Of a stretch of DNA of 64,000 bases, positions 33,241 through 56,055 are shown in pieces. The notes beneath the pieces are model-generated. The model worked only from the letters and a program-made list of their open reading frames with translations, was not told where the DNA came from and did not search any database. This DNA comes from Piromyces finnis finn (lineage: Eukaryota > Fungi > Neocallimastigomycota): NCBI GenBank assembly GCA_002104945.1, contig MCFH01000001.1, positions 1,488,001-1,552,000 on the forward strand, given 5' to 3'. Both the position numbers and the translations under genes were made by a program. Each line of letters begins with the position of its first letter. Positions within the stretch are counted from its first letter, which is position 1.

Positions 33241-33850
33241 ACCCCTCTTGGGAACGTGCCTTCATTTATTTAATAAATGTAGTTTCTCAAGGGGGTCTAC
33301 TCATGCTCATTCCCTCTTGGGAACGTGCCTTCATTTATTTAATAAATGTAGTTTCTCAAGGGGGTCTACTCATGCTCATGGTACTGAGAGAGTAGAAAGA
33401 ATTAAATCCAAGTATTGCGCAATGGATGCTTGGTGCCCTCTTAGGAATGTGCCTTCATTTATTTAATAAATGTAATTTCTCAAGGGGGTCTACTCATGCT
33501 ACCTCTTGGGAACGTGCCTTCATTTATTTAATAAATGTAGTTTCTCAAGGGGGTCTACTCATGCTCATGGTACTGAGAGAGTAGAAAGAATTAAATCCAA
33601 GTATTGCGCAATGGATGCTTGGTGCCCTCTTAGGAATGTGCCTTCATTTATTTAATAAATGTAATTTCTCAAGGGGGTCTACTCATGCTCATGGTACTGA
33701 GAGAGTAGAAAGAATTAAATCCAAGCATTGCGCAATGGATGCTTGGTTAGTCTTCAAGGGAAAATTATTAGGACTAAGCTCATGGTACTGAGCGATTAAA
33801 AAACATTTTATTCATCAAATTTAAGTATTTGATGAATAAGTGAATGTTTG
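33241..33850 (+). repeat. Stacked 5' ends of three nested LINEs: ~124-nt structured 5' UTR units
   Basis: Element 5' ends (a/t)c(c)(c)tcttgggaac at 33241, 33311 and 33501. Unit period is 124 nt (ggggg at 33549 and 33673). Confidence 0.9.
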
Positions 33851-33859
33851 ATTTTTCAG

Positions 33860-34200
33860 GTAAGTTTGTATAGTATTTAATTAGAAGAGTAATACATTTT
33901 GTTGCTGTATTTTTTCTTTTATTCATGTATTCATGTAGTACTACTCTTCTCTTGTAAGAATCCAATGTAGTCAACTTTAGCATTTGCATTGTACTTTTAT
34001 ATTCATGTAGCTATTGTTGTATTGTTTCTTGTAAGAGACTGATTCACTCTACATCATGTAAAAATACTATTCACAAGCTTTCTGGTGTCGACATTCTTGA
34101 TTCAAATTTTTTACCAATTTAAATATTTAATGAAAAGTAAAGTCAAACAAGTTTAGTGTCAAAAAGCGATTCGAATTTACTAACAACAAACCAAAACTAG
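33860..34200 (+). other. Putative 341-nt spliceosomal intron in the LINE 5' UTR
   Basis: CAG|GTAAGT donor at 33857-33865, TACTAAC at 34178-34184, TAG at 34198-34200. The same signals occur in copies 2, 3 and 4. Confidence 0.55.
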
Positions 34201-34392
34201 AATTTTTAAAGAAAATTTACAACTAGAATTCAAAAAATAAGAAACTTTAAACAAAGCATCGTAACAATTTTTGTACTATCCAGTACTTTTAAGAAGAGAG
34301 AGAGAGACAGATTTTTTTCCATATACGTTATATTTGTAATTTTTATTAGTATTTATTTTATATTCAATATTTTTTAATTAGAATTTATTATC

Positions 34393-37300
34393 ATGTCAGT
34401 CCTTTATATTAAAGATAAGAATTATATCAGACGTGGTACCCGGTCTTATGGTATCCCCTTAGATGATATTCGCTCCTTCTTTATCCGTGGTATTCGATCA
34501 TGGTCAGTAAATATGCTATGGGAAAAACTCGAGGTTATTCTAGAAGATAAATTTAATTCAGTTATTAGTGTTAAATATTTTCAAACTTTCAATGATCACT
34601 TTTTCTTAGTCAAGGTTCATGGTTCATCAAAAGATTGTATTAAAATCTTACACATGTTAAAGAAGAAACTTTCAGTTACCTCAATTTCCTTTTCAGCTCG
34701 TAGTAGAAGGAATCACAAATACACTTTTTCCACTCTCAAACGTAAAATTTTAGTTTCTAATAAACATCAACATTCTATTCAACAATCATTTCAACAATCA
34801 GTTCAACAATCAGTTCAACAATCTCATCAACAATCCGATCTTCAACGAGATCTTCAACAGGATCTTCAACAAGTTTCCCATCATGAAAATATTCCAGATC
34901 TACAGCAAACACAATTTCAATCTCAACATTCAACAATTAATTCTAATAGTTCTATCAACTCTGATAACAGTTCAATAGTTGATAGTTCTTCAGTTTCACA
35001 GCCATCTAGTAATAGTTCTACTTATTCCTCTGATGCATCATCCATTAATAACGATGACTTTAATAATAATAATAATAGCAACGATTCTTCCTCATCCAAC
35101 AAGCCTGATAACTTTTCTTTTTGTCTTAGTTGGAACACCAATGGGTGGAATCATGAAAAGAGAGATAGTATTAGCTATTTCACAGCTATTTTCAAACCAT
35201 TATTCTTATGTTTCCAAGAAACTGGTAATGGTTCTGGATCGAATACAGATTATCCTTGTCGTGTTACTTTGCGAAACTATAGACACTTTTTCAAGAAAGC
35301 TGACGAATCAGTTCCGGGAATGAGAGGTTTATATTTAGGTTTTCACAATTCGTGTCAAGCCTCACTTGAAAACTTCTCTGGAAAGTATATTATTTCTATT
35401 TATACTTTTAGTCTCTGGAATAGATTCAAATGCTCGATTGGAAATGTTTATATGCCTCATAGTCATCACAACATCTATGTTGATCATGCAAAGTTAGAAG
35501 TTCGCTTGTGGTTACAAACTCATTCATCCCATCCATCGATTCTTGTTGGTGATTTTAATATGTCTAAAGTAAAATTATCCAACTGGTTATCAACTAATGG
35601 ATTAGGAGATTGGGAAATTCTTCCGCTTAGAGGGTCTACTATCTCTTGGACTCGAGGTGAACAATCTTCCGACATTGACCATGCTCTTATCAATTCGAAG
35701 ATGAAAGATCTTATTCACTCAGGATCATTTATAAATAATTTTTATCCTGTATCAGACCATAAGCCACTTCTTATTAATGGTAAAATTATTCCTATGGAAG
35801 ATTTTTCTAATGACTTTAACGTTCCTAAGAAAATTCTGAAATGGAATAGATTAAAATGTATTGAGGAAAAGGAATCTATTCTCAGTCATAATAAATTCCA
35901 AATACTTTCAGCAAAATTCAACGATCCTAATGTTTCTACAGATGATCTTTCCAAAGAATTTACTTCAACTGCTTTTTCAATTGCAGACGAGCTCAGTATT
36001 ACCTCAGCAAATAATGTTATAAAGTCTTCATTTCATATTTCACAACAAATTTTTAATCTCCAAAAAATCAAAATGAAGTTGTATAAGAGATTTAAAAAAG
36101 AAAGAATTTATGATATAGATGAATTTATTAAAAGAATTAAAATCTACCGTAAGCTCATTGATTACATCCACAAAAGATGTAATGAATTTAGGAAACAAGA
36201 ATATCTTCATTGGATTAAAACAGGATGTGAGTATATGAAGAGTCATAATCCTAAGAAGGCCTGGAAATGGATCAAGAAAACTGCAAAAATTGGAAAAGAT
36301 TCTTTCTTTATTGCTCAACCAATTAAAAATAAAAATGGAGAGTTAGTTGTTGCTACGGAAGAACAACTAGATGTGTGGCATGATCATTTCGAAAATCTTG
36401 CATCAGATCCAAGTGGCGTAAGTCTTGATTTGGAGCATTGGTATGAAGAACCAACGAATAAACGTTTTTCACTCCCTATGCTTGATGAATGGGATATCAA
36501 CCAAGATATTAGTATTGATGAAGTCAAGTCAGCTATCCTCTCTACTCCGAATTATAAAGCATCAGGTCCGGATGGTATTCCAATTGAATTTTACAAAGCA
36601 TTAATTCCATCAAGTAATGATTCTAATAATGCTACAGATAATAATTCTTCCGGTAATACCACTTCAGATAATGATTCTTATGGTTTAAATTTTATTCTTA
36701 AATTATACAACCGTATTTGGGATGGAGACTTCCCCAACTCATGGAATGAATCCAGTATTGTTTCTATTCCTAAGAAGGGAGATTTGACAGATTGTGATAA
36801 CTATCGAGGTATATCACTTATCAATAATGGTATTAAGTTGATTTCCAAAATTGTCACCACTAGAATCTCAGAATATGGTCTAAAGAATAATTTCATTAGA
36901 CCTGAACAATTTGGTTTTCGAAAAAAGGAAGAAAGTATCAGTCTTTTCATTTCAATCCAAGAAATATGCCGTAGACGTCAATTAGATAATAAAGAGACAT
37001 ATTTGGCCTTTTTAGATCTCAGGAAAGCATACGATTCAGTCCCAATCGGTAATATTCTCCATAAATTAGATTGTTTAGGAATCCGAGGTAAGAGTTTACA
37101 ATTCATCAAAAATTTATATTTAACATCTAAGGCTAATGTCAAATTAGATGGACAATTCTCGAAATCTTTTGATGTGAAGAAAGGAGTCCGTCAAGGATGC
37201 CCTCTTTCTCCTATTCTCTTTAATCTCTTTATTAATGATATATTTAAAGAGTGTGAAGATCTCGGAGTCAGTTTAGGTGACACTCGATGCTGTGGTGGAC

Positions 37301-38919
37301 TTTTTGCAGATGATATAGTTATTTGTGCTCCAACAAGAGGATGCTTAAAAAAGATGCTTAGAAGAGTTAATGAATGGGCCTTGTATAATGAAATGGAATT
37401 TGGTATCCAGAAATGTTCAACGATGGTGATTCGTCCTGAATCAATAGAAAATCAGAACAAGAGAGATCCAACATTTTACTTAGCAGGACAACCCATTCCA
37501 ACTACTGATTGTTATACTTATCTTGGTGTTCCATTTGATAAGAATCTGTCCCTTAAACCAGTTATTAAAGCTCTTAATAACAAGGTTTTGAAAGGACTTT
37601 TCTCAGTCAGTAAATTCTTAAGAAATCCTAATATTCCTATTCCCTTCAAAAAGCTAGTACTTAACTCACAAGTGATTAGCAGAGTTTCATACTTTGCACC
37701 ATTACTTGGATCCAACAAAGCCAGGTCTAGGATTGCACAGAAGCATGTTAACAAAGGAATACGATGGGTTGCCGGAGTTCATAAAGCTGTATCGTTTATA
37801 TCTTTATACTCTATCTCAAAAGATTTGAATATTCCTCCATTGTCAGCCAAATGTGCATTAGCTCAGGTTAGATGTTTTAACAAATGGAAAAACTCAAATT
37901 GTATTATCTCACACCTTGTCAATTACATTCCTAAATTTAGAAAATACACGTGGTGCAAATCAAGTAGGACACTTGATAAAAAACTAAAGAAACATGGAGA
38001 TGTTAAAGCAGTTAAAAACTTTTATTGGAAAGATCTCAAAGGGAATTCAATCAAAGCGCAATATTATGATGATAATAAGTTTATTGATACTAAAGATTTT
38101 ATTAAATTATGTTATGAGTACCCAGAGTTTGCCTATGGCTTCTACTGGCTATTGAAAGCAAGAAGCGGATACAAGTTGGATGCTAGAGTTGCCAAAGCTG
38201 CCAAATTTGTTGATCCAGTTTGTCCTAACTACTGTCCATGTTGCAAGTGTGGAGATCAAAGTATTAAACATTGGTTATTAGATTGTCCAACATTTAGAGA
38301 TATCCGTATTAAACATTATGATTCCATAGTCCAGCTATTAAATTTTTTCAGTCAACGTAATTCCAATAGTCCTATCAATAATAATGAAATTGATAATATC
38401 AGTAGAGATAGTAATAATATTAATAGTAATAGTAACAATAGTAATAATAACAATAGTAATAGTAACAATAGTAATAATAACAATAGTAGTAATAGAAATA
38501 ATAATATTAGTAATGATAGCAATAGTGAAGATAATAATTCTAATTTAGATAGTAATTTAGTTAATGATAGTAATAGTTCTAATAATCCGGTGAATATTAA
38601 TGTGTATGATTATTCTAGTGTGTGCAGTAAAATATTTAAATTCCTTCTTGGGGGAAGAAGTTTTAACAATATTAATTACAATTCAAGGGAATGGAAAGAA
38701 CTTTGTAAGCGTCAGATTCAATCTGGTACTAACGAAGGAACACCATTCTTGACGGTAACCGCGGAACTTCTAACCAAAATCATGCCTTTTGCTATTGGCC
38801 AGCAATGGTCAATGTTCAAAAGGTTTGAAGCAACATCCAAGAGCGTCAATGCTGAAGAAACAGTAAGACAGGCCAGGAGGGCCAGCGCAACCAATGGAGA
38901 TCATAATTTTGTCCCATGA
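34393..38919 (+). CDS. Single-ORF LINE protein: RRM-like N-terminus, APE endonuclease, reverse transcriptase, CCHC knuckle
   Basis: APE motifs SWNTNG, FQETG, LVGDFN, IDHAL, SDHKP. RT motifs ASGPDG, YRGISL, QFGFR, FLDLRKAYDSV, GVRQGCPLSPILF, LFADD. C-x2-C-x8-H-x4-C (CPCCKCGDQSIKHWLLDC). Confidence 0.97.
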   Translation: MSVLYIKDKNYIRRGTRSYGIPLDDIRSFFIRGIRSWSVNMLWEKLEVILEDKFNSVISVKYFQTFNDHFFLVKVHGSSKDCIKILHMLKKKLSVTSISFSARSRRNHKYTFSTLKRKILVSNKHQHSIQQSFQQSVQQSVQQSHQQSDLQRDLQQDLQQVSHHENIPDLQQTQFQSQHSTINSNSSINSDNSSIVDSSSVSQPSSNSSTYSSDASSINNDDFNNNNNSNDSSSSNKPDNFSFCLSWNTNGWNHEKRDSISYFTAIFKPLFLCFQETGNGSGSNTDYPCRVTLRNYRHFFKKADESVPGMRGLYLGFHNSCQASLENFSGKYIISIYTFSLWNRFKCSIGNVYMPHSHHNIYVDHAKLEVRLWLQTHSSHPSILVGDFNMSKVKLSNWLSTNGLGDWEILPLRGSTISWTRGEQSSDIDHALINSKMKDLIHSGSFINNFYPVSDHKPLLINGKIIPMEDFSNDFNVPKKILKWNRLKCIEEKESILSHNKFQILSAKFNDPNVSTDDLSKEFTSTAFSIADELSITSANNVIKSSFHISQQIFNLQKIKMKLYKRFKKERIYDIDEFIKRIKIYRKLIDYIHKRCNEFRKQEYLHWIKTGCEYMKSHNPKKAWKWIKKTAKIGKDSFFIAQPIKNKNGELVVATEEQLDVWHDHFENLASDPSGVSLDLEHWYEEPTNKRFSLPMLDEWDINQDISIDEVKSAILSTPNYKASGPDGIPIEFYKALIPSSNDSNNATDNNSSGNTTSDNDSYGLNFILKLYNRIWDGDFPNSWNESSIVSIPKKGDLTDCDNYRGISLINNGIKLISKIVTTRISEYGLKNNFIRPEQFGFRKKEESISLFISIQEICRRRQLDNKETYLAFLDLRKAYDSVPIGNILHKLDCLGIRGKSLQFIKNLYLTSKANVKLDGQFSKSFDVKKGVRQGCPLSPILFNLFINDIFKECEDLGVSLGDTRCCGGLFADDIVICAPTRGCLKKMLRRVNEWALYNEMEFGIQKCSTMVIRPESIENQNKRDPTFYLAGQPIPTTDCYTYLGVPFDKNLSLKPVIKALNNKVLKGLFSVSKFLRNPNIPIPFKKLVLNSQVISRVSYFAPLLGSNKARSRIAQKHVNKGIRWVAGVHKAVSFISLYSISKDLNIPPLSAKCALAQVRCFNKWKNSNCIISHLVNYIPKFRKYTWCKSSRTLDKKLKKHGDVKAVKNFYWKDLKGNSIKAQYYDDNKFIDTKDFIKLCYEYPEFAYGFYWLLKARSGYKLDARVAKAAKFVDPVCPNYCPCCKCGDQSIKHWLLDCPTFRDIRIKHYDSIVQLLNFFSQRNSNSPINNNEIDNISRDSNNINSNSNNSNNNNSNSNNSNNNNSSNRNNNISNDSNSEDNNSNLDSNLVNDSNSSNNPVNINVYDYSSVCSKIFKFLLGGRSFNNINYNSREWKELCKRQIQSGTNEGTPFLTVTAELLTKIMPFAIGQQWSMFKRFEATSKSVNAEETVRQARRASATNGDHNFVP

Positions 38920-39155
38920 TAAAATTTTGATCTTTGGCTCGGTGTCCCATTGGAAGTCAAATACAATTATTATACTTTAGTATGATAGTGGCTTTCTTAC
39001 TTTAATTAAAATTACTAGAATACATTATACCCAATTTTTATTCATTTGTGTTTATTTAAACATATTTTTTTTTATTTTTATTTTATTTTAATTTTTATAT
39101 TACATGTATTATAATTTTAATTAAATTAATAATAAAGTTTAAAATATTTGATGCC

Positions 39156-39193
<38 letters not shown>

Positions 39194-39202
39194 ACTCATG
39201 CT

Positions 39203-42200
39203 CATGGTACTGAGAGAGTAGAAAGAATTAAATCCAAGCATTGCGCAATGGATGCTTGGTTAGTCTTCAAGGGAAAATTATTAGGACTAAGCTCATGGTA
39301 CTGAGCGATTAAAAAACATTTTATTCATCAAATTTAAGTATTTGATGAATAAGTGAATGTTTGATTTTTCAGGTAAGTTTGTATAGTATTTAATTAGAAG
39401 AGTAATACATTTTGTTGCTGTATTTTTTCTTTTATTCATGTATTCATGTAGTACTACTCTTCTCTTGTAAGAATCCAATGTAGTCAACTTTAGCATTTGC
39501 ATTGTATTTTTATATTCATGTAGCTATTGTTGTATTGTTTCTTGTAAGAGACTGATTCACTCTACATCATGTAAAAATACTATTCACAAGCTTTCTGGTG
39601 TCGACATTCTTGATTCAAATTTTTTACCAATTTAAATATTTAATGAAAAGTAAAGTCAAACAAGTTTAGTGTCAAAAAGCGAATCGAATTTACTAACAAC
39701 AAACCAAAACTAGAATTTTTAAAGAAAATTTACAACTAGAATTCAAAAAAAAGAAACTTTAAACAAAGCATCGTAACAATTTTTGTACTATCCAGTACTT
39801 TTAAGAAGAGAGAGAGAGACAGATTTTTTTCCATATACGTTATATTTGTAATTTTTATTAGTATTTATTTTATATTCAATATTTTTTAATTAGAATTTAT
39901 TATCATGTCAGTCCTTTATATTAAAGATAAGAATTATATCAGACGTGGTACCCGGTCTTATGGTATCCCCTTAGATGATATTCGCTCCTTCTTTATCCGT
40001 GGTATTCGATCATGGTCAGTAAATATGCTATGGGAAAAACTCGAGGTTATTCTAGAAGATAAATTTAATTCAGTTATTAGTGTTAAATATTTTCAGACTT
40101 TCAATGATCACTTTTTCTTAGTCAAGGTTCATGGTTCATCAAAAGATTGTATTAAAATCTTACACATGTTAAAGAAGAAACTTTCAGTTACCTCAATTTC
40201 CTTTTCAGCTCGTAGTAGAAGGAATCACAAATACACTTTTTCCACTCTCAAACGTAAAATTTTAGTTTCTAATAAACATCAACATTCTATTCAACAATCA
40301 TTTCAACAATCAGTTCAACAATCAGTTCAACAATCTCATCAACAATCCGATCTTCAACAAGATCTTCAACAGGATCTTCAACAAGTTTCCCATCATGAAA
40401 ATATTCCAGATCTACAGCAAACACAATTTCAATCTCAACATTCAACAATTAATTCTAATAGTTCTATCAACTCTGATAACAGTTCAATAGTTGATAGTTC
40501 TTCAGTTTCACAGCCATCTAGTAATAGTTCTACTTATTCCTCTGATGCATCATCCATTAATAACGATGACTTTAATAATAATAATAATAGCAACGATTCT
40601 TCCTCATCCAACAAGCCTGATAACTTTTCTTTTTGTCTTAGTTGGAACACCAATGGGTGGAATCACGAAAAGAGAGATAGTATTAGCTATTTCACAGCTA
40701 TTTTCAAACCATTATTCTTATGTTTCCAAGAAACTGGTAATGGTTCTGGATCGAATACAATTATCCTTGTCGTGTTACTTTGCGAAACTATAGACACTTT
40801 TTCAAGAAAGCTGACGAATCAGTTCCGGGAATGAGAGGTTTATATTTAGGTTTTCACAATTCATGTCAAGCCTCACTTGAAAACTTCTCTGGAAAGTATA
40901 TTATTTCTATTTATACTTTTAGTCTCTGGAATAGATTCAAATGCTCGATTGGAAATGTTTATATGCCTCATAGTCATCACAACATCTATGTTGATCATGC
41001 AAAGTTAGAAGTTCGCTTGTGGTTACAAACTCATTCATCCCATCCATCGATTCTTGTTGGTGATTTTAATATGTCTAAAGTAAAATTATCCAACTGGTTA
41101 TCAACTAATGGATTAGGAGATTGGGAAATTCTTCCGCTTAGAGGGTCTACTATCTCTTGGACTCGAGGTGATCAATCTTCCGACATTGACCATGCTCTTA
41201 TCAATTCGAAGATGAAAGATCTTATTCACTCAGGATCATTTATAAATAATTTTTATCCTGTATCAGACCATAAGCCACTTCTTATTAATGGTAAAATTAT
41301 TCCTATGGAAGATTTTTCTAATGACTTTAATGTTCCTAAGAAAATTCTGAAATGGAATAGATTAAAATGTATTGAGGAAAAGGAATCTATTCTCAGTCAT
41401 AATAAATTCCAAATACTTTCAGCAAAATTCAACGATCCTAATGTTTCTACAGATGAACTTTCCAAAGAGTTTACTTCAACTGCTTTTTCAATTGCAGACG
41501 AGCTCAGTATTACCTCAGCAAATAATGTTATAAAGTCTTCATTTCATATTTCACAACAAATTTTTAATCTCCAAAAAATCAAAATGAAGTTGTATAAGAG
41601 ATTTAAAAAAGAAAGAATTTATGATATAGATGAATTTATTAAAAGAATTAAAATCTACCGTAAGCTCATTGATTACATCCACAAAAGATGTAATGAATTT
41701 AGGAAACAAGAATATCTTCATTGGATTAAAACAGGATGTGAGTATATGAAGAGTCATAATCCTAAGAAGGCCTGGAAATGGATCAAGAAAACTGCAAAAA
41801 TTGGAAAAGATTCTTTCTTTATTGCTCAACCAATTAAAAACAAAAATGGAGAATTAGTTGTTGCTACGGAAGAACAACTAGATGTGTGGCATGATCATTT
41901 CGAAAAGCTTGCATCAGATCCAAGTGGTGTAAGTCTTGATTTGGAGCATTGGTATGAAGAACCAACGAATAAACGTTTTTCACTCCCTATGCTTGATGAA
42001 TGGGATATCAACCAAGATATTAGTATTGATGAAGTCAAGTCAGCTATCCTCTCTACTCCGAATTATAAAGCATCAGGTCCGGATGGTATTCCAATTGAAT
42101 TTTACAAAGCATTAATTCCATCAAGTAATGATTCTAATAATGCTACAGATAATAATTCTTCCGGTAATACCACTTCAGATAATGATGCTTATGGTTTAAA

Positions 42201-44655
42201 TTTTATTCTTAAATTATTCAACCGTATTTGGGATGGAGATTCCCCAACTCATGGAATGAATCCAGTATTGTTTCTATTCCTAAGAAGGGAGATTTGACAG
42301 ATTGTGATAACTATCGAGGTATATCACTTATCAATAATGGTATTAAGTTGATTTCCAAAATTGTCACCACTAGAATCTCAGAATATGGTCTAAAGAATAA
42401 TTTCATTAGACCTGAACAATTTGGTTTTCGAAAAAAGGAAGAAAGTATCAGTCTTTTCATTTCAATCCAAGAAATATGCCGTAGACGTCAATTAGATAAT
42501 AAAGAGACATATTTGGCCTTTTTAGATCTCAGGAAAGCATACGATTCAGTCCCAATCGGTAATATTCTCCATAAATTAGATTGTTTAGGAATCCGAGGTA
42601 AGAGTTTACAATTATCAAAAATTTATATTTAACATCTAAGGCTAATGTCAAATTAGATGGACAATTCTCGAAATCTTTTGATGTGAAGAAAGGAGTCCGT
42701 CAAGGTGCCCTCTTTCTCCTATTCTCTTTAATCTCTTTATTAATGATATATTTAAAGAGTGTGAAGATCTCGGAGTCAGTTTAGGTGACACTCGATGCTG
42801 TGGTGGACTTTTTGCAGATGATATAGTTATTTGTGCTCCAACAAGAGGATGCTTAAAAAAGATGCTTAGAAGAGTTAATGAATGGGCCTTGTATAATGAA
42901 ATGGAATTTGGTATCCAGAAATGTTCAACGATGGTGATTCGTCCTGAATCAATAGAAAATCAGAACAAGAGAGATCCAACATTTTACTTAGCAGGACAAC
43001 CCATTCCAACTACTGATTGTTATACTTATCTTGGTGTTCCATTTGATAAGAATCTGTCCCTTAAACCAGTAATTAAAGCTCTTAATAACAAGGTTTTGAA
43101 AGGGCTTTTCTCAGTCAGTAAATTCTTAAGAAATCCTAATATTCCTATTCCTTTCAAAAACTAGTACTTAACTCACAAGTGATTAGCAGAGTTTCATACT
43201 TTGCACCATTACTTGGATCCAACAAAGCTAGGTCTAGGATTGCTCAGAAGCATGTTAACAAAGGAATACGATGGGTTGCCGGAGTTCATAAAGCTGTATC
43301 GTTTATATCTTTATACTCTATCTCAAAAGATTTGAATATTCCTCCATTGTCAGCCAAATGTGCGTTAGCTCAGGTTAGATGTTTTAACAAATGGAAAAAC
43401 TCAAATTGTATTATCTCACACCTTGTCAATTACATTCCTAAATTTAGAAAATACACGTGGTGCAAATCAAGTAGGACACTTGATAAAAAACTAAAGAAAC
43501 ATGGAGATGTTAAAGCAGTTAAAAACTTTTATTGGAAAGATCTCAAAGGGAATTCAATCAAAGCGCAATATTATGATGATAATAAATTTATTGAAACTAA
43601 AGATTTTATTAAATTATGTTATGAGTACCCAGAGTTTGCCTATGGCTTCTACTGGCTATTGAAAGCAAGAAGCGGATACAAGTTGGATGCTAGAGTTGCC
43701 AAAGCTGCCAAATTTGTTGATCCAGTTTGTCCTAACTACTGTCCATGTTGCAAGTGTGGAGATCAAAGTATTAAACATTGGTTATTAGATTGTCCAACAT
43801 TTAGAGATATCCGTATTAAACATTATGATTCATAGTCCAGCTATTAAATTTTTTCAGTCAACGTAATTCCAATAGTCCTATCAATAATAATGAAATTGAT
43901 AATATCAGTAGAGATAGTAATAAATTAATAGTAATAGTAACAATAGTATAATAACAATAGTAATAGTAACAATAGTAATAATAACAATAGTAGTAATAGA
44001 AATAATAATATTAGTAATGATAGCAATAGTGAAGATAATAATTCTAATTTAGATAGTAATTTAGTTAATGATAGTAATAGTTCTAATAATCCGGTGAATA
44101 TTAATGTGTATGATTATTCTAGTGTGTGCAGTAAAATATTTAAATTCCTTCTTGGGGGAAGAAGTTTTAACAATATTAATTACAATTCAAGGGAATGGAA
44201 AGAACTTTGTAAGCGTCAGATTCAATCTGGTACTAATGAAGGAACACCATTCTTGACGGTAACCGCGGAACTTCTAACCAAAATCATGCCTTTTGCTATT
44301 GGCCAGCAATGGTCAATGTTCAAAAGGTTTGAAGCAACATCCAAGAGCGTCAATGCTGAAGAAACAGTAAGACAGGCCAGGAGGGCCAGCGCAACCAATG
44401 GAGATCATAATTTTGTCCCATGATAAAATTTTGATCTTTGGCTCGGTGTCCCATTGGAAGTCAAATACAATTATTATACTTTAGTATGATAGTGGCTTTC
44501 TTACTTTAATTAAAATTACTAGAATACATTATACCCATTTTTATTCATTTGTGTTTATTTAAACATATTTTTTTTATTTTTATTTTATTTTAATTTTTAT
44601 TACATGTATTATAATTTTAATTAAATTAATAATAAAGTTTAAAATATTTGATGCC

Positions 44656-44696
<41 letters not shown>
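39203..44696 (+). mobile_element. LINE copy 2, 3' part (its 5' end is 33311-33500)
   Basis: 33311-33500 joined to 39203 onward rebuilds the same two-unit 5' UTR as copy 1. A38 tail at 44659-44696. TSD (a)ctcatgctcat at 33300-33310 and 44697-44707. Confidence 0.92.
39905..44423 (+). pseudogene. Frameshifted ORF of LINE copy 2
   Basis: Nearly identical to the copy 1 ORF but broken into 6 or more pieces, mostly by short (mainly single-base) deletions (~40760, 42240, 42612, 42705, 43160, 43832). These may be consensus errors. Confidence 0.8.
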
Positions 44697-44699
<3 letters not shown>

Positions 44700-44707
44700 A
44701 TGCTCAT

Positions 44708-47700
44708 TATGAAGAGTAAAAGAATTAAATCCAAGTATTGCGCAATGGATGCTTGGTGCCCTCTTAGGAATGTGCCTTCATTTATTTAATAAATGTAATT
44801 TCTCAAGGGGGTCTACTCATGCTCATGGTACTGAGAGAGTAGAAAGAATTAAATCCAAGCATTGCGCAATGGATGCTTGGTTAGTCTTCAAGGGAAAATT
44901 ATTAGGACTAAGCTCATGGTACTGAGCGATTAAAAAACATTTTATTCATCAAATTTAAGTATTTGATGAATAAGTGAATGTTTGATTTTTCAGGTAAGTT
45001 TGTATAGTATTTAATTAGAAGAGTAATACATTTTGTTGCTGTATTTTTTCTTTTATTCATGTATTCATGTAGTACTACTCTTCTCTTGTAAGAATCCAAT
45101 GTAGTCAACTTTAGCATTTGCATTGTACTTTTATATTCATGTAGCTATTGTTGTATTGTTTCTTGTAAGAGACTGATTCACTCTACATCATGTAAAAATA
45201 CTATTCACAAGCTTTCTGGTGTCGACATTCTTGATTCAAATTTTTTACCAATTTAAATATTTAATGAAAAGTAAAGTCAAACAATTTTAGTGTCAAAAAG
45301 CGAATCGAATTTACTAACAACAAACCAAAACTAGAATTTTTAAAGAAAATTTACAACTAGAATTCAAAAAAAAAGAAACTTTAAACAAAGCATCGTAACA
45401 ATTTTTGTACTATCCAGTACTTTTAAGAAGAGAGAGAGAGACAGATTTTTTCCATATACGTTATATTTGTAATTTTTATTAGTATTTATTTTATATTCAA
45501 TATTTTTTAATTAGAATTTATTATCATGTCAGTCCTTTATATTAAAGATAAGAATTATATCAGACGTGGTACCCGGTCTTATGGTATCCCCTTAGATGAT
45601 ATTCGCTCCTTCTTTATCCGTGGTATTCGATCATGGTCAGTAAATATGCTATGGGAAAAACTCGAGGTTATTCTAGAAGATAAATTTAATTCAGTTATTA
45701 GTGTTAAATATTTTCAGACTTTCAATGATCACTTTTTCTTAGTCAAGGTTCATGGTTCATCAAAAGATTGTATTAAAATCTTACACATGTTAAAGAAGAA
45801 ACTTTCAGTTACCTCAATTTCCTTTTCAGCTCGTAGTAGAAGGAATCACAAATACACTTTTTCCACTCTCAAACGTAAAATTTTAGTTTCTAATAAACAT
45901 CAACATTCTATTCAACAATCATTTCAACAATCAGTTCAACAATCTCATCAACAATCCGATCTTCAACAAGATCTTCAACAAGATCTTCAACAAGTTTCCC
46001 ATCATGAAAATATTCCAGATCTACAGCAAACACAATTTCAATCTCAACATTCAACAATTAATTCTAATAGCTCTATCAACTCTGCTAACAGTTCAATAGT
46101 TGATAGTTCTTCAGTTTCACAGCCATCTAGTAATAGTTCTACTTATTCCTCTGATGCATCATCCATTAATAATGATGACCTTGATAATAATAATAAAGCA
46201 ACGATTCTTCCTCATCCATCAAGCCTGATAACTTTTCTTTTTGTCTTAGTTGGAACACTAATGGGTGGAATCATGAAAAGAGAGATAGTATTAGCTATTT
46301 CACAGCTATTTTCAAACCATTATTTTTATGTTTCCAAGAAACTGGTAATGGTTCTGGATCGAATACAGATTATCCTTGTCGTGTTACTTTGCGAAACTAT
46401 AGACACTTTTTCAAGAAAGCTGAGAATCAGTTCCGGAATGAGAGGTTTATATTTAGGTTTTCACAATTCGTGTCAAGCCTCACTTGAAAACTTCTCTGGA
46501 AAGTATATTATTTCTATTTATACTTTTAGTCTCTGGAATAGATTCAAATGCTCGATTGGAAATGTTTATATGCCTCATAGTCATCACAACATCTATGTTG
46601 ATCATGCAAAGTTAGAAGTTCGCTTGTGGTTACAAACTCATTCATCCCATCCATCGATTCTTGTTGGTGATTTTAATATGTCTAAAGTAAAATTATCCAA
46701 CTGGTTATCAACTAATGGATTAGGAGATTGGGAAATTCTTCCGCTTAGAGGGTCTACTATCTCTTGGACTCGAGGTGATCAATCTTCCGACATTGACCAT
46801 GCTCTTATCAATTCGAAGATGAAAGATCTTATTCACTCAGGATCATTTATAAATAATTTTTATCCTGTATCAGACCATAAGCCACTTCTTATTAATGGTA
46901 AAATTATTCCTATGGAAGATTTTTCTAATGACTTTAATGTTCCTAAGAAAATTCTGAAATGGAATAGATTAAAATGTATTGAGGAAAAGGAATCTATTCT
47001 CAGTCATAATAAATTCCAAATACTTTCAGCAAAATTCAACGATCCTAATGTTTCAACAGATGAACTTTCCAAAGAGTTTACTTCAACTGCTTTTTCAATT
47101 GCAGACGAGCTCAGTATTACTTCAGCAAATAATGTTATAAAGTCTTCATTTCATATTTCACAACAAATTTTTAATCTTCAAAAAATCAAAATGAAGTTGT
47201 ATAAGAGATTTAAAAAAGAAAGAATTTATGATATAGATGAATTTATTAAAAGAATTAAAATCTACCGTAAGCTCATTGATTACATCCACAAAAGATGTAA
47301 TGAATTTAGGAAACAAGAATATCTTCATTGGATTAAAACAGGATGTGAGTATATGAAGAGTCATAATCCTAAGAAGGCCTGGAAATGGATCAAGAAAACT
47401 GCAAAAATTGGAAAAGATTCTTTCTTTATTGCTCAACCAATTAAAAATAAAAATGGAGAATTAGTTGTTGCTACGGAAGAACAACTAGAAGTGTGGCATG
47501 ATCATTTCGAAAATCTTGCATCAGACCCAAGTGGTGTAAGTCTTGATTTGGAGCATTGGTATGAAGAACCAATGAATAAACGTTTTTCACTTCCTATGCT
47601 TGATGAGTGGGATATCAACCAAGATATTAGTATTGATGAAGTCAAGTCAGCTATCCTCTCTACTCCAAATTATAAAGCATCAGGTCCAGATGGTATTCCA

Positions 47701-50295
47701 ATTGAATTTTACAAAGCATTAATTCCATCAAGTAATGATTCTAATAATGCTACAGGTAATAATTCTTCTGGTAATACTACTTCAGATAATGACGCTCATG
47801 GTTTAAATTTTATTCTTAAATTATTTAACCGTATTTGGGATGGAGATTTCCCCAACTCATGGAATGAATCCAGTATTGTTTCTATTCCTAAGAAGGGAGA
47901 TTTGACAGATTGTGATAACTATCGAGGTATATCACTTATCAATAATGGTATTAAGTTGATCTCCAAAATTGTCACCACTAGAATCTCAGAATATGGTCTA
48001 AAGAATAATTTCATTAGACCTGAACAATTTGGTTTTCGAAAAAAGGAAGAAAGTATCAGTCTTTTCATTTCAATCCAAGAAATATGCCGTAGACGTCAAT
48101 TAGATAATAAAGAGACATATTTGGCCTTTTTAGATCTCAGGAAAGCATACGATTCAGTCCCAATCGGTAATATTCTCCATAAATTAGATTGTTTAGGAAT
48201 CCGAGGTAAGAGTTTACAATTTATCAAAAATTTATATTTAACATCTAAGGCTAATGTCAAATTAGATGGACAATTCTCGAAATCTTTTGATGTGAAGAAA
48301 GGAGTCCGTCAAGGTTGCCCTCTTTCTCCTATTCTCTTTAATCTCTTTATTAATGATATATTTAAAGAGTGTGAAGATCTCGGAGTTAGTTTAGGTGACA
48401 CTCGATGCTGTGGTGGACTTTTTGCAGATGATATAGTTATTTGTGCTCCAACAAGAGGATGCTTAAAAAAGATGCTTAGAAGAGTTAATGAATGGGCCTT
48501 GTATAATGAAATGGAATTTGGTATCCAGAAATGTTCAACGATGGTGATTCGTCCTGAATCAATAGAAAATCAGAACAAGAGAGATCCAACATTTTACTTA
48601 GCAGGACAACCCATTCCAACTACTGATTGTTATACTTATCTTGGTGTTCCATTTGATAAGAATTTGTCCCTTAAACCAGTAATTAAAGTTCTTAATAACA
48701 AGGTTTTGAAAGGACTTTTCTCAGTCAGTAAATTCTTAAGAAATCCTAATATTCCTATTCCTTTCAAAAAACTAGTACTTAACTCTCAAGTGATTAGCAG
48801 AGTTTCATACTTTGCACCATTACTTGGATCCAACAAAGCTAGGTCTAGGATTGCTCAGAAGCATGTTAACAAAGGAATACGATGGGTTGCCGGAGTTCAT
48901 AAAGCCGTATCGTTTATATCTTTATACTCTATCTCAAAAGATTTGAATATTCCTCCATTGTCAGCCAAATGTGCGTTAGCTCAGGTTAGATGTTTTAACA
49001 AATGGAAAAACTCAAATTGTATTATCTCACACCTTGTCAATTACATTCCTAAATTTAGAAAATACACGTGGTGCAAATCAAGTAGGACACTTGAAAAAAA
49101 ACTAAAGAAGCATGGAGATGTTAAAGCAGTTAAAAACTTTTATTGGAAAGATCTCAAAGGGAATTCAATCAAAGCGCAATATTATGATGATAATAAATTT
49201 ATTGAAACTAAAGATTTTATTAAATTATGTTATGAGTACCCAGAGTTTGCCTATGGCTTCTACTGGCTATTGAAAGCAAGAAGCGGATATAAGTTGGATG
49301 CTAGAGTTGCCAAAGCTGCTAAATTTGTTGATCCAGTTTGTCCTAACTACTGTCCATGTTGCAAGTGTGGAGATCAAAGTATTAAACATTGGTTATTAGA
49401 TTGTCCAACATTTAGAGATATCCGTATTAAACATTATGATTCCATAGTCCAGCTATTAAATTTTTTCAGTCAACGTAATTCCAATAGTCCTATCAATAAT
49501 AATGAAATTGATAATATCAGTAGAGATAGCAATAACAGTAATAGTAATAGTAACAATAATAATTATAACAATAGTAATAATAACAATAGTAGTAATAGTA
49601 ATAATAGAAATAGTAATAATAACAATAGTAGTAATAGAAATAATAATATTAATAATGATAGCAATAGTGAAGATAATAATTCTAATTTAGATAGTAATTT
49701 AGTTAATGATAGTAATAGTTCTAATAATCCGGTGAATATTAATGTGTATGATTATTCTAGTGTGTGCAGTAAAATATTTAAATTCCTTCTTGGGGGAAGA
49801 AGTTTTAACAATATTAATTACAATTCAAGGGAATGGAAAGAACTTTGTAAGCGTCAGATTCAATCTGGTACTAATGAAGGAACACCATTCTTGACGGTAA
49901 CCGCGGAACTTCTAACCAAAATCATGCCTTTTGCTATTGGCCAGCAATGGTCAATGTTCAAAAGGTTTGAAGCAACATCCAAGAGCGTCAATGCTGAAGA
50001 AACAGTAAGACAGGCCAGGAGGGCCAGCGCAACCAATGGAGATCATAATTTTGTTCCATGACAAAATTTTGATCTTTGGCTCGGTGTCCCATTGGAAGTC
50101 AAATACAATTATTATACTTTAGTATGATAGTGGCTTTCTTACTTTAATTAAAATTACTAGAATACATTATACCCAATTTTTATTCATTTGTGTTTATTAA
50201 ACATATTTTTTTTTATTTTTATTTATTTTTAATTTTTTATTACATGTATTATAATTTTAATTAAATTAATAATAAAGTTTAAAATATTTGATGCC

Positions 50296-50326
<31 letters not shown>
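44708..50326 (+). mobile_element. LINE copy 3, 3' part (its 5' end is 33241-33310)
   Basis: 33241-33310 joined to 44708 onward rebuilds a two-unit 5' UTR, with slight degradation right after the TSD. Poly(A) at 50299-50326. Confidence 0.9.
45526..50061 (+). CDS. LINE copy 3 ORF (1511 aa): open, but the APE N-terminus is replaced by compensating frameshifts
   Basis: Between ~46190 and ~46430 it reads ATILPHPSSLITFLFVLVGT... (alternative frame) instead of SWNTNG/QETG. The RT is intact. Confidence 0.8.
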   Translation: MSVLYIKDKNYIRRGTRSYGIPLDDIRSFFIRGIRSWSVNMLWEKLEVILEDKFNSVISVKYFQTFNDHFFLVKVHGSSKDCIKILHMLKKKLSVTSISFSARSRRNHKYTFSTLKRKILVSNKHQHSIQQSFQQSVQQSHQQSDLQQDLQQDLQQVSHHENIPDLQQTQFQSQHSTINSNSSINSANSSIVDSSSVSQPSSNSSTYSSDASSINNDDLDNNNKATILPHPSSLITFLFVLVGTLMGGIMKREIVLAISQLFSNHYFYVSKKLVMVLDRIQIILVVLLCETIDTFSRKLRISSGMRGLYLGFHNSCQASLENFSGKYIISIYTFSLWNRFKCSIGNVYMPHSHHNIYVDHAKLEVRLWLQTHSSHPSILVGDFNMSKVKLSNWLSTNGLGDWEILPLRGSTISWTRGDQSSDIDHALINSKMKDLIHSGSFINNFYPVSDHKPLLINGKIIPMEDFSNDFNVPKKILKWNRLKCIEEKESILSHNKFQILSAKFNDPNVSTDELSKEFTSTAFSIADELSITSANNVIKSSFHISQQIFNLQKIKMKLYKRFKKERIYDIDEFIKRIKIYRKLIDYIHKRCNEFRKQEYLHWIKTGCEYMKSHNPKKAWKWIKKTAKIGKDSFFIAQPIKNKNGELVVATEEQLEVWHDHFENLASDPSGVSLDLEHWYEEPMNKRFSLPMLDEWDINQDISIDEVKSAILSTPNYKASGPDGIPIEFYKALIPSSNDSNNATGNNSSGNTTSDNDAHGLNFILKLFNRIWDGDFPNSWNESSIVSIPKKGDLTDCDNYRGISLINNGIKLISKIVTTRISEYGLKNNFIRPEQFGFRKKEESISLFISIQEICRRRQLDNKETYLAFLDLRKAYDSVPIGNILHKLDCLGIRGKSLQFIKNLYLTSKANVKLDGQFSKSFDVKKGVRQGCPLSPILFNLFINDIFKECEDLGVSLGDTRCCGGLFADDIVICAPTRGCLKKMLRRVNEWALYNEMEFGIQKCSTMVIRPESIENQNKRDPTFYLAGQPIPTTDCYTYLGVPFDKNLSLKPVIKVLNNKVLKGLFSVSKFLRNPNIPIPFKKLVLNSQVISRVSYFAPLLGSNKARSRIAQKHVNKGIRWVAGVHKAVSFISLYSISKDLNIPPLSAKCALAQVRCFNKWKNSNCIISHLVNYIPKFRKYTWCKSSRTLEKKLKKHGDVKAVKNFYWKDLKGNSIKAQYYDDNKFIETKDFIKLCYEYPEFAYGFYWLLKARSGYKLDARVAKAAKFVDPVCPNYCPCCKCGDQSIKHWLLDCPTFRDIRIKHYDSIVQLLNFFSQRNSNSPINNNEIDNISRDSNNSNSNSNNNNYNNSNNNNSSNSNNRNSNNNNSSNRNNNINNDSNSEDNNSNLDSNLVNDSNSSNNPVNINVYDYSSVCSKIFKFLLGGRSFNNINYNSREWKELCKRQIQSGTNEGTPFLTVTAELLTKIMPFAIGQQWSMFKRFEATSKSVNAEETVRQARRASATNGDHNFVP

Positions 50327-51237
50327 TGCTGAAGAAATGTTGCAAGTGTGGAGATCAAAGTATTAAACATTGGTTATTAGATTGTCCAACATTTAGAGAT
50401 ATCCGTATTAAACATTATGATTATATAGTCCATCTATTAAATTTTTTCAGTCAACGTAATTCCAATAGTCCTATCAATAATAATGAAAATGTTAATATCA
50501 GCAGAGATAGCAATAACAGTAATAGTAATAGTAATAATATTAATAATAACAATAGTAATAATAACAATAGTAGTAATAGAAATAATAATATTAGTAATGA
50601 TAGCAATAGTGATGATAATAATTCTAATTTAGATAGTAATTTAGTTGATGATAGTAATAGTTCTAATAATCCGGTGAATATTAATGTGTATGATTATTCT
50701 AGTGTGTGCAGTAAAATATTTAAATTCCTTCTTGGGGGAAGAAGTTTTAACAATATTAATTACAATTCAAGGGAATGGAAAGAACTTTGTAAGCGTCAGA
50801 TTCAATCTGGTACTAATGAAGGAACACCATTCTTGACGGTAACCGCGGAACTTCTAACCAAAATCATGCCTTTTGCTATTGGCCAGCAATGGTCAATGTT
50901 CAAAAGGTTTGAAGCAACATCCAAGAGCGTCAATGCTGAAGAAACAGTAAGACAGGCCAGGAGGGCCAGCGCAACCAATGGAGATCATAATTTTGTTCCA
51001 TGACAAAATTTTGATCTTTGGCTCGGTGTCCCATTGGAAGTCAAATACAATTATTATACTTTAGTATGATAGTGGCTTTCTTACTTTAATTAAAATTACT
51101 AGAATACATTATACCCAATTTTTATTCATTTGTGTTTATTTAAACATATTTTTTTTATTTTTATTTATTTTTAATTTTTTATTACATGTATTATAATTTT
51201 AATTAAATTAATAATAAAGTTTAAAATATTTGATGCC

Positions 51238-51271
<34 letters not shown>

Positions 51272-52180
51272 CTGAAGAAATGTTGCAAGTGTGGAGATCA
51301 AAGTATTAAACATTGGTTATTAGATTGTCCAACATTTAGAGATATCCGTATTAAACATTATGATTATATAGTCCATCTATTAAATTTTTTCAGTCAACGT
51401 AATTCCAATAGTCCTATCAATAATAATGAAAATGTTAATATCAGCAGAGATAGCAATAACAGTAATAGTAATAGTAATAATATTAATAATAACAATAGTA
51501 ATAATAACAATAGTAGTAATAGAAATAATAATATTAGTAATGATAGCAATAGTGATGATAATAATTCTAATTTAGATAGTAATTTAGTTGATGATAGTAA
51601 TAGTTCTAATAATCCGGTGAATATTAATGTGTATGATTATTCTAGTGTGTGCAGTAAAATATTTAAATTCCTTCTTGGGGGAAGAAGTTTTAACAATATT
51701 AATTACAATTCAAGGGAATGGAAAGAACTTTGTAAGCGTCAGATTCAATCTGGTACTAATGAAGGAACACCATTCTTGACGGTAACCGCGGAACTTCTAA
51801 CCAAAATCATGCCTTTTGCTATTGGCCAGCAATGGTCAATGTTCAAAAGGTTTGAAGCAACATCCAAGAGCGTCAATGCTGAAGAAACAGTAAGACAGGC
51901 CAGGAGGGCCAGCGCAACCAATGGAGATCATAATTTTGTTCCATGACAAAATTTTGATCTTTGGCTCGGTGTCCCATTGGAAGTCAAATACAATTATTAT
52001 ACTTTAGTATGATAGTGGCTTTCTTACTTTAATTAAAATTACTAGAATACATTATACCCAATTTTTATTCATTTGTGTTTATTTAAACATATTTTTTTTA
52101 TTTTTATTTATTTTTAATTTTTTATTACATGTATTATAATTTTAATTAAATTAATAATAAAGTTTAAAATATTTGATGCC

Positions 52181-52211
<31 letters not shown>

Positions 52212-53125
52212 TGCTGAAGAAATGTTGCAAGTGTGGAGATCAAAGTATTAAACATTGGTTATTAGATTGTCCAACATTTAGAGATATCCGTATTAAACAT
52301 TATGATTATATAGTCCATCTATTAAATTTTTTCAGTCAACGTAATTCCAATAGTCCTATCAATAATAATGAAAATGTTAATATCAGCAGAGATAGCAATA
52401 ACAGTAATAGTAATAGTAATAATATTAATAATAACAATAGTAATAATAACAATAGTAGTAATAGAAATAATAATATTAGTAATGATAGCAATAGTGATGA
52501 TAATAATTCTAATTTAGATAGTAATTTAGTTGATGATAGTAATAGTTCTAATAATCCGGTGAATATTAATGTGTATGATTATTCTAGTGTGTGCAGTAAA
52601 ATATTTAAATTCCTTCTTGGGGGAAGAAGTTTTAACAATATTAATTACAATTCAAGGGAATGGAAAGAACTTTGTAAGCGTCAGATTCAATCTGGTACTA
52701 ACGAAGGAACACCATTCTTGACGGTAACCGCGGAACTTCTAACCAAAATCATGCCTTTTGCTATTGGCCAGCAATGGTCAATGTTCAAAAGGTTTGAAGC
52801 AACATCCAAGAGCGTCAATGCTGAAGAAACAGTAAGACAGGCCAGGAGGGCCAGCGCAACCAATGGAGATCATAATTTTGTCCCATGATAAAATTTTGAT
52901 CTTTGGCTCGGTGTCCCATTGGAAGTCAAATACAATTATTATACTTTAGTATGATAGTGGCTTTCTTACTTTAATTAAAATTACTAGAATACATTATACC
53001 CAATTTTTATTCATTTGTGTTTATTTAAACATATTTTTTTTATTTTTATTTTTATTTTTTAATTTTTTATTACATGTATTATAATTTTAATTAAATTAAT
53101 AATAAAGTTTAAAATATTTGATGCC

Positions 53126-53163
<38 letters not shown>
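50327..53163 (+). mobile_element. Three tandem 5'-truncated LINE copies (~940-950 bp each), each preceded by tgctgaagaaa
   Basis: Copies at 50338-51269, 51281-52211 and 52223-53163. All start at tgttgcaagtg (inside the CCHC knuckle) and end in poly(A). The 11-mer occurs at 50327, 51270, 52212 and 53164. Confidence 0.92.

Positions 53164-53165
<2 letters not shown>

Positions 53166-56052: not shown

Positions 56053-56055
<3 letters not shown>

What the first reader, a model, noticed from the sequence alone, without database searches (positions are those of the whole stretch)
33241..50326. Self-targeting LINE: Russian-doll nesting into a landing pad carried in its own 5' UTR
Seen: copy 1 (33501-39190) is flanked by tctactcatgct at 33489-33500 and 39191-39202. 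Removing it rebuilds a complete copy 2 (33311-44696), which is flanked by (a)ctcatgctcat at 33300-33310 and 44697-44707. Removing that rebuilds copy 3 (33241-50326). A third poly(A) junction (56053) also opens in the same motif (tcaagggggtctactc), although its left TSD is not visible. So three junctions fall within ~14 nt of one motif, and each full-length element brings two new copies of that motif. Inference: the element targets its own 5' UTR upstream of the host ORF, leaving resident ORFs intact. That would make a self-renewing safe harbour that grows a same-strand array. Known precedents: Tx1-clade elements are sequence-specific (Tx1L inserts into Tx1D), and Chlorella Zepp inserts into itself. 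I know of no such description for anaerobic fungi, but I cannot search.
Basis: partly seen in the sequence, partly recalled or inferred. Interest (0 to 1): 0.92.

Follow-up and report, generated by a model that had tools for sequence, protein, structure and literature searches.

The report
LINE nested into its own copies
A 5.7-kb jumping gene (an L1-like LINE) of a very AT-rich, gut-fungus-like genome has inserted twice into almost the same spot of the 124-bp repeat at the front of older copies of itself; the nesting is real, but this self-nesting is already known from the algal LINE Zepp and from Cnl1 of Cryptococcus, and a single dedicated landing-pad sequence is not shown.

Summary
Cutting out 33501-39190 plus one 12-bp duplication, then the next layer plus one 11/12-bp duplication, rebuilds three colinear 5.69-kb elements. 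Each has two 124-bp 5' monomers, one APE+RT ORF and a poly(A) tail. The two insertions lie 3-4 nt apart in the same monomer phase, one in monomer 1 and one in monomer 2, on the same strand. That is unlikely by chance.

The strict reading, one motif as a dedicated landing pad, is only partly supported.
- The third junction (56053) has no left half.
- The same family also inserted at a different internal site in this window (TSD tgctgaagaa).
- Contigs of a DNA run show more same-strand self-insertions at monomer phase 33 and at four ORF positions.
- The inferred nick sites share no consensus.

The whole 30-kb array is on the + strand and has been reshaped by unequal crossover and gene conversion.

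The closest known case is Zepp/ZeppL, an L1-clade LINE that nests into existing copies. Cnl1 behaves alike but is reported as R2/MoTeR-like. The scan had already noted and followed up the same behaviour on other pieces of this genome. I rate it a new member of a known kind, of moderate interest.

The parts
33241..33310 (+). 5' part of copy 3 (first 70 nt of monomer 1). Its last 11-12 nt (33299/33300-33310) are the left TSD of copy 2.
33311..33500 (+). 5' part of copy 2 (monomer 1 plus 66 nt of monomer 2). Its last 12 nt (33489-33500) are the left TSD of copy 1.
33501..39190 (+). Copy 1, full length (5690 bp). Monomers at 33501-33624 and 33625-33748, ORF at 34393-38919 (1508 aa), poly(A) at 39159-39190.
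39191..44696 (+). Rest of copy 2. It opens with the right TSD of copy 1 (39191-39202); poly(A) at 44659-44696. The reading frame is interrupted by single-base deletions, which may be consensus errors of the assembly.
44697..50326 (+). Rest of copy 3. It opens with the right TSD of copy 2 (44697-44707), followed by a small scar in monomer 1. ORF at 45526-50061 (1511 aa), poly(A) at 50299-50326.
50327..53163 (+). Three tandem 943-bp units. Each is tgctgaagaa plus a 5'-truncated copy (from the equivalent of 38238) plus poly(A). Units 1 and 2 are identical.
53164..53488 (+). Y: a 330-bp 3' end that starts exactly at the internal site tgctgaagaa, with poly(A). It is the host of the X insertions, and tgctgaagaa is their TSD.
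53489..54098 (+). W: 610 bp of non-LINE DNA ending in A11. Its start, ttggtggaac, resembles the left flank ttggtgaa(a) at 33233-33241, so it may be the outer TSD.
54099..56052 (+). T: an old, internally deleted LINE copy (86-94.5% identity up to about 54814). From there it continues in register as young copy-1/2-type sequence. It ends in A57.
56053..61757 (+). Copy 4. It lacks the first 46 nt and starts at monomer phase 47. ORF at 56903-61492 (1529 aa), with poly(A).
61758..62689 (+). tgctgaagaa plus X' (a 5'-truncated copy) plus poly(A).
62690..64000 (+). W' and the start of T'. This is the second unit of a 9.2-kb higher-order repeat; 785 bp are 100% identical to 53489-54273.

Best explanation
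This is an APE-type, L1-like, single-ORF LINE. It is 5.69 kb long, with two 124-bp 5' monomers, an N-terminal ferredoxin/RRM-like domain, APE, RT, a CCHC knuckle and a poly(A) tail. It preferentially re-inserts, in the same orientation, into resident copies of its own family, as Zepp does. Here copy 2 entered monomer 1 of copy 3, and copy 1 then entered monomer 2 of copy 2. Both went in by ordinary target-primed reverse transcription with cuts staggered by 11-12 bp, 3-4 nt apart in the same monomer phase. The GC-richer monomer (39.5% GC against an 18% background) is a hot region with several preferred nick positions. It is not the only target. The downstream array grew by further same-strand, mostly 5'-truncated insertions, some joined in register with the host copy. 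It was then remodelled by unequal crossover and gene conversion. Shown: the nesting, the TSDs, the single orientation, the domain content, and other self-insertion positions in the genome. Inferred: that the preference is mechanistic (strand-specific recognition or tethering to family DNA or chromatin) rather than a result of selection.
For: Excision rebuilds three colinear elements with exact TSDs. The two TSDs cover monomer phases 56-67 and 59/60-70 in different monomers. My rough estimate of the chance of such a coincidence, given nesting somewhere in a 5.7-kb element and counting orientation, is about 0.002. All LINE pieces in the window are on the + strand and none lies in the 33 kb of gene-bearing DNA upstream. 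At least 8 events look separate, so the chance of one orientation is about 2^-7. The tgctgaagaa site near the ORF end was used as a target inside the family. Contigs of DNA run X1 give further same-strand junctions from a host position to the element's 5' start, with short filler bases: phase 33 twice, and 36222, 36520, 37137 and 38691 (table 5c). No strand-changing joint was listed. APE (PF03372, 31.4 bits) and RT (PF00078, 123.8 bits) are present, and the best solved relative is human L1 ORF2p. The young copies 1 and 2 and the young 3' part of T differ by 0-3 bases over about 930 bp, and all sit next to monomer phases 47-70. Precedents: Zepp nests into existing copies, and Cnl1 inserts into itself in tandem orientation.
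Against: Only two firmly documented monomer insertions come from one locus, and the locus was picked because it looked striking. The family has very many copies: 10,364 contigs were laid, and summed depth is in the hundreds of thousands against about 150 per unique junction contig. Some coincidences are therefore expected. The array shows heavy gene conversion, so the events may not be fully independent. No genome-wide census was possible. Contigs were too short to confirm the long-range order.
Confidence: 0.6

Rival explanations
1. One reading: the element's endonuclease recognises one sequence (caagggggtctactcatgctcat) carried in its own 5' monomer. That sequence is a dedicated, self-renewing landing pad.
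For: Two TSDs start 3-4 nt apart in the same motif, although in different monomers. A third poly(A) junction opens 9 nt upstream in the same motif. The sites flank the 5' arm of a 7-bp inverted repeat, tctactc...gagtaga. The TSDs are 38-45% GC in an 18% GC genome, which is unlike an A/T-run-seeking L1 endonuclease.
Against: The nick positions are not identical and share no consensus. The same family used tgctgaagaa in this window. It also used monomer phase 33 and four ORF positions elsewhere in the genome. The third junction lacks a left half. No sequence-specific DNA-binding domain was found; the N-terminal domain is a generic ferredoxin/RRM-like fold.
Confidence: 0.2
2. There is no real self-targeting. 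The endonuclease merely avoids extremely AT-rich DNA, insertions into genes are purged, and survivors pile up in LINE DNA. Recombination then multiplies the pattern.
For: LINE DNA (31% GC) and its monomers (39.5%) are the GC-richest non-genic DNA here. There is a 9.2-kb higher-order repeat, identical X1 and X2 units, and mosaic copies.
Against: It does not explain the uniform orientation of all pieces or of the contig joints. It also does not explain two hits within 4 nt of the same monomer phase. The TSD-bounded nesting cannot be made by recombination.
Confidence: 0.15
3. Assembly artefact: a long-read assembler mis-joined reads from different copies of a high-copy repeat.
For: Copy 2 differs from copy 1 by 12 single-base deletions and no single-base insertion, which is typical of unpolished long-read consensus. 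X1 and X2, and also W and W', are 100% identical.
Against: A mis-join would not create exact 12- and 11-bp target duplications that restore colinear two-monomer elements. Junctions of the same kind exist as independent contigs in a DNA run.
Confidence: 0.04

Closest known systems
Zepp (Chlorella/Coccomyxa) and Zepp-like L1 LINEs of Chlamydomonas
   Same: L1-type, poly(A)-tailed LINE. [quoted passage not shown] Clusters of nested elements reach 42 kb and are GC-richer than the genome (PMC3446292).
   Different: Zepp arrays are described as mostly 3' ends, with one cluster per chromosome (centromeric or telomeric). Here full-length copies are nested in the 5' monomers. By unverified scan notes, nests occur on many pieces of the genome. 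Phylogenetic relatedness to Zepp was not tested.
Cnl1 of Cryptococcus
   Same: [quoted passage not shown] Its exact sequence specificity is still undefined (PMC12810828).
   Different: Cnl1 is subtelomeric and 3.4-3.5 kb long. A 2026 analysis found it closest to R2/MoTeR, which I know as restriction-like-endonuclease lineages. This element carries an APE domain and an L1-like RT, and the array starts 630 bp downstream of an Hsp70 gene.
Tx1-group sequence-specific L1-like LINEs (Tx1L in Tx1D, and snRNA, 5S and microsatellite targeters)
   Same: APE-type LINEs that land in one orientation at a defined place in another repeated sequence (my own knowledge, plus titles).
   Different: Those elements use one precise target. 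Here several target positions are used. Clade membership was not tested, because no reference sequences were available.
Mouse L1 monomeric 5' UTR
   Same: Tandem monomers at the exact 5' end, which probably carry the internal promoter (my own knowledge).
   Different: Mouse L1 is not known to aim at its own monomers.

Membership tests
APE-type non-LTR retrotransposon (LINE), L1-like | Reverse transcriptase domain of the LINE type | tested here: met
   PF00078 at aa 792-1047, E 1e-35. Best solved relative is human L1 ORF2p, E 8.6e-33, ahead of R2 at 9e-18.
APE-type non-LTR retrotransposon (LINE), L1-like | Apurinic-endonuclease-like domain N-terminal to the RT | tested here: met
   PF03372 at 31.4 bits (cut-off 24.5), roughly aa 245-456. 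Homologues carry PF03372 or PF14529.
APE-type non-LTR retrotransposon (LINE), L1-like | Poly(A) tail, target-site duplications, 5'-truncated copies | tested here: met
   A28-A57 tails. TSDs of 12, 11/12 and 10 bp. Truncated copies X, Y and T.
Zepp/Cnl1-like self-nesting LINE (a behavioural class) | Copies inserted into copies of the same family, in the same orientation, forming arrays | tested here: met
   Three-layer nest and a >30-kb single-strand array. Further same-strand self-junctions in run X1.
Zepp/Cnl1-like self-nesting LINE (a behavioural class) | Self-insertion more frequent than chance across the genome | tested here: inconclusive
   Only this window and a few contig joints were available. 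No census was possible. Scan notes on other pieces agree but are unverified.
Zepp clade (phylogenetic) | RT/EN phylogeny groups it with Zepp/ZeppL | not tested
   No Zepp reference sequence was obtainable with the tools.
Tx1-group sequence-specific LINE | Nearly all copies sit at one precise target sequence | tested here: not met
   At least three different internal targets are seen in the window and run X1: monomer phases 47-70, phase 33, the tgctgaagaa site and ORF positions. There is also a non-LINE outer site.
Tx1-group sequence-specific LINE | RT phylogeny within the Tx1 group | not tested
   No reference sequences were available.

The most novel reading that the evidence does not exclude
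The 124-bp 5' monomer has evolved as both promoter and landing pad. The element's own APE, or a structure formed by the monomer's inverted repeat, directs new copies in sense orientation into the monomers of resident copies. Each insertion is then placed behind a resident promoter and adds two fresh targets. This would be a self-propagating safe harbour, not yet described for an APE-type LINE in fungi.
Probability: 0.2. Interest if true: 0.75.

Novelty: new member of a known kind. Interest (0 to 1): 0.45.

Why it matters
Self-nesting LINEs build large single-orientation arrays, which in green algae mark centromeres and in Cryptococcus fill subtelomeres. Finding the same behaviour in an APE-type LINE of an anaerobic-gut-fungus-like genome extends the phenomenon to another lineage. 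This element has a very high copy number, signs of transcription, and a hot region in its promoter-like monomers. It offers many insertion events for working out how such elements recognise themselves, a point still called undefined even for Cnl1. It also matters in practice: these arrays are prone to mis-assembly and gene conversion, which affects genome size and repeat estimates for these fungi.

Tried and rejected
- Exact-protein look-ups of the ORFs of copies 1 and 3 and of the 225-aa X ORF found nothing on record.
- Two scans of metagenome contigs found 0 hits, one for the 3' end plus A10 and one for the 21-nt motif.
- The homologue search gave nearest proteins at only 63% identity. Two relatives fetched with flanks (L001, L002) are single, un-nested copies of other families and say nothing about this one.
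- Rfam at gathering thresholds and a tRNA scan of the whole window found nothing, so no known ribozyme or RNA gene explains the monomer or W.
- The protein Atlas only confirmed APE+RT.
- The N-terminal domain model (pLDDT 79.6) gave only weak ferredoxin-like matches. L1 ORF1p ranked 50th, so I make no claim beyond the fold class.
- Read laying gave contigs of about 100 nt, too short to confirm the long-range nesting.
- I considered read-through 3' homing, in which RNA carrying downstream monomer sequence guides the next insertion. I set it aside because the three poly(A)/host junctions differ.
- I considered that copy 4 plus T is a segmental duplicate of copy 3 plus the copy-2 tail. I rejected this because the junctions differ by 13 nt and copy 4 lacks copy 3's scar.
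- I considered that copy 2's broken ORF is biological. Its differences from copy 1 are 12 single-base deletions and no single-base insertion, which suggests consensus error.
Full report
**Observation**

- tctactcatgct flanks 33501-39190, at 33489-33500 and 39191-39202.
- (a)ctcatgctcat lies at 33299/33300-33310 and 44696/44697-44707.
- Poly(A) tracts of 28-57 A end at 39190, 44696, 50326 and 56052, and 56053 opens with tcaagggggtctactc.

I cut out copy 1 with one TSD copy, then the copy-2 layer with one TSD copy, and aligned the results. This gave three colinear elements of 5690, 5684 and 5689 bp.
- Each starts at (a/t)cc(c)tcttggg.
- Each has exactly two 124-bp monomers.
- Identities are 99.5% (copies 1 and 2), 98.7% (1 and 3) and 99.0% (2 and 3).

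A plain head-to-tail array of 5'-truncated copies would not leave partial monomers of 70 and 190 bp upstream that complete the downstream copies exactly. The nested reading is therefore right. Copy 3's monomer 1 carries a small scar (five deleted bases and a few substitutions) immediately after the TSD. That is where the second-strand cut is expected.

**The element**

Copy 1 has one ORF of 1508 aa. It holds these parts:
- A conserved N-terminal domain of about 125 aa. The model has mean pLDDT 79.6 and a beta-alpha-beta-beta-alpha-beta fold, with only weak ferredoxin/RRM-like structural matches.
- An AP-endonuclease domain, PF03372 at 31.4 bits, about aa 245-456.
- A reverse transcriptase, PF00078, E 1e-35. 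Its best solved relative is human L1 ORF2p.
- A CCHC knuckle with a weak zf-RVT match, followed by an N/S-rich tail.

The nearest database proteins are only 63% identical. They come from gut or rumen-type metagenomes, with more distant relatives in Neocallimastix and Batrachochytrium.

Copies 1, 3 and 4 have intact ORFs. Copy 2's frame is broken, but by 12 single-base deletions and no single-base insertion relative to copy 1. That looks like long-read consensus error.

**Where the insertions sit**

Phases are in copy-3 numbering.
- Copy 2's TSD covers monomer phases 59/60-70 of monomer 1.
- Copy 1's TSD covers phases 56-67 of monomer 2.
- The same phase in different monomers argues for recognition of the monomer, by sequence or structure, and against a fixed distance from the 5' tip.
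- The sites lie on the 5' arm of a 7-bp inverted repeat, tctactc...gagtaga.
- Given nesting somewhere in a 5.7-kb element, a second hit within +/-4 nt of the same phase in either monomer, on the same strand, has a chance of roughly 0.002 (my estimate). This is post hoc, and the family is very abundant, so the number should not be over-read.

**The third junction**

Copy 4 (56053-61757) lacks its first 46 nt and follows the A57 tail of T. No left half of copy 4 exists in the window.

T is a mosaic. Sequence of 86-94.5% identity runs to about 54814. After that it continues in register as copy-1/2-type sequence, with 1-3 mismatches in about 930 bp. Two readings fit:
- A young copy nicked copy 4 at phase 46/47, and its cDNA was resolved by homology with an older copy upstream. 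That would leave no TSD.
- Copy 4 is a slightly truncated insertion into T's poly(A).

I count this junction as suggestive only.

**The rest of the array**

Everything from 33241 to the window's end is the same family on the + strand. No LINE piece lies in the 33 kb upstream, which carries ordinary genes, including an Hsp70 gene ending 630 bp before the array.

After copy 3 come these parts:
- Three 943-bp units, each tgctgaagaa plus a copy truncated at the equivalent of 38238.
- Y, a 330-bp 3' end that begins exactly with tgctgaagaa, which is an internal site at 38851-38860 in copy-1 coordinates.
- W, 610 bp of non-LINE DNA.
- T, copy 4, one more X unit, and then W and T again.

The simplest account has four steps.
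- A truncated copy (X) inserted into Y with tgctgaagaa as its TSD. This is a second self-target unrelated to the monomer motif.
- Y itself may have arisen by an insertion at that site, resolved in register.
- X was then amplified by unequal crossover. X1 and X2 are identical.
- A 9.2-kb unit was duplicated. W and W' are 100% identical over 785 bp.

The last 300 bp are identical among copy 3, X1, X2 and copy 4. They are also identical among copy 1, copy 2 and T. Gene conversion is therefore active in the array.

**Evidence from outside the window**

The element is held by DNA runs of one organism, by RNA runs, and by gut metagenomes.

Contigs of DNA run X1 were laid on 33210-39209. In all, 10,364 contigs fitted. 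Summed depth was in the hundreds of thousands, against about 150 for single junction contigs. This points to a very high copy number.

Table 5c of that call lists same-strand joints from a host position back to the element's 5' start, with short filler bases:
- Monomer phase 33, twice, with different filler.
- Host positions 36222, 36520, 37137 and 38691 in the ORF.
- One ambiguous joint near the monomer boundary.

No strand-changing joint was listed. The family therefore nests into itself at many positions. There is an apparent excess in the 248-bp monomer region: 2-3 of 7 joints against 0.3 expected. There is also a second hot nucleotide, at phase 33. The inferred bottom-strand nick sites share no consensus. 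The TSDs are 38-45% GC, the monomers 39.5%, the LINE 31% and the background 18%.

A census was not possible. Exact-protein look-ups and two metagenome scans returned nothing. The contigs are too short to confirm the long-range order.

**Earlier notes of this scan**

Notes on other pieces of the same genome describe the same 124-nt-monomer LINE nested into itself. They report nests in the 5' monomer, including 'two insertions at the identical nucleotide', in the RT region and at the ORF end, always co-oriented. One of these was followed up and pointed to Cnl1 and Zepp. These are unverified AI notes. They agree with the contig joints.

**Comparison with what is known**

[quoted passage not shown] Coccomyxa has clusters of nested Zepp of up to 42 kb that are GC-richer than the genome (PMC3446292).
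[quoted passage not shown] A 2026 paper finds it closest to R2/MoTeR and calls its specificity undefined (PMC12810828).
- I found no description for anaerobic fungi in the held library.

The present element works like Zepp. Membership of the Zepp or Tx1 clades was not tested, because no references were available. The Tx1-type criterion of a single precise target is not met.

**Verdict**

- The nesting is real and non-random.
- The best explanation is a Zepp-like, orientation-specific preference for the family's own DNA, with the 5' monomer as a hot region, followed by recombination (confidence 0.6).
- The strict landing-pad model remains possible (0.2).
- Composition plus selection (0.15) and assembly artefact (0.04) are less likely.
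- It is a new member of a known kind, already seen by this scan elsewhere in the genome. Interest is moderate.

Noticed in passing
window 53162-54799 vs 62363-64000; 50337-52211: There is a 9.2-kb higher-order tandem repeat. W plus the start of T is 100% identical to its second copy, and all 7 mismatches lie in the first 300 bp. Two 943-bp X units are identical. This is either very recent duplication or over-expansion by the assembler.
   Followed up: partly
window 39203-44696 (copy 2): Copy 2 differs from copy 1 by 12 single-base deletions and no single-base insertion; at least 7 of them fall in the ORF. This is probably long-read consensus error rather than decay.
   Followed up: partly
window 34273-34349: One DNA contig of run X1 skips 77 nt with GT..AG ends in the 5' leader, just upstream of the ATG. 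Some genomic copies may descend from a spliced transcript. This differs from the caggtaagt site at 33858 that another note flagged.
   Followed up: no
window 34393-34797 (aa 1-135 of the ORF): An N-terminal domain conserved in the family (25-43% identity to 14 homologues) has a confident beta-alpha-beta-beta-alpha-beta model. It may be an ORF1-like RNA-binding module fused to the APE-RT protein.
   Followed up: partly
window 33678-33712 and the equivalent place in each monomer: A 7-bp inverted repeat, tctactc(N18)gagtaga, lies inside the monomer. Both monomer insertions cut at its 5' arm and loop.
   Followed up: partly
window 53489-54098 (W) and 33225-33241: W is 610 bp of non-LINE DNA ending in A11, with no Rfam or tRNA match. 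Its first bases, ttggtggaac, resemble the left flank of the whole array, ttggtgaa(a). This could be an imperfect outer TSD, which would make 33241-53488 one compound insertion.
   Followed up: partly
window 54099-54900 (T): An old, internally deleted copy (pieces equivalent to 34654-34822 and 37423-37842, plus a 28-bp deletion at 54693) switches in register to young sequence near 54815-54890. This is a gene-conversion tract or a homology-resolved insertion.
   Followed up: partly
window 30624-32612: An intact Hsp70 gene (PF00012, 870 bits) ends 630 bp upstream of the array. The array abuts ordinary single-copy genes, and no telomere-like repeat is visible in the window.
   Followed up: no
window 50326-51003, 52211-52888, 61757-62434: The junction poly(A)+tgctgaagaa creates an ATG that opens a 225-aa ORF covering the C-terminal part of the LINE protein. 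It is probably incidental.
   Followed up: no
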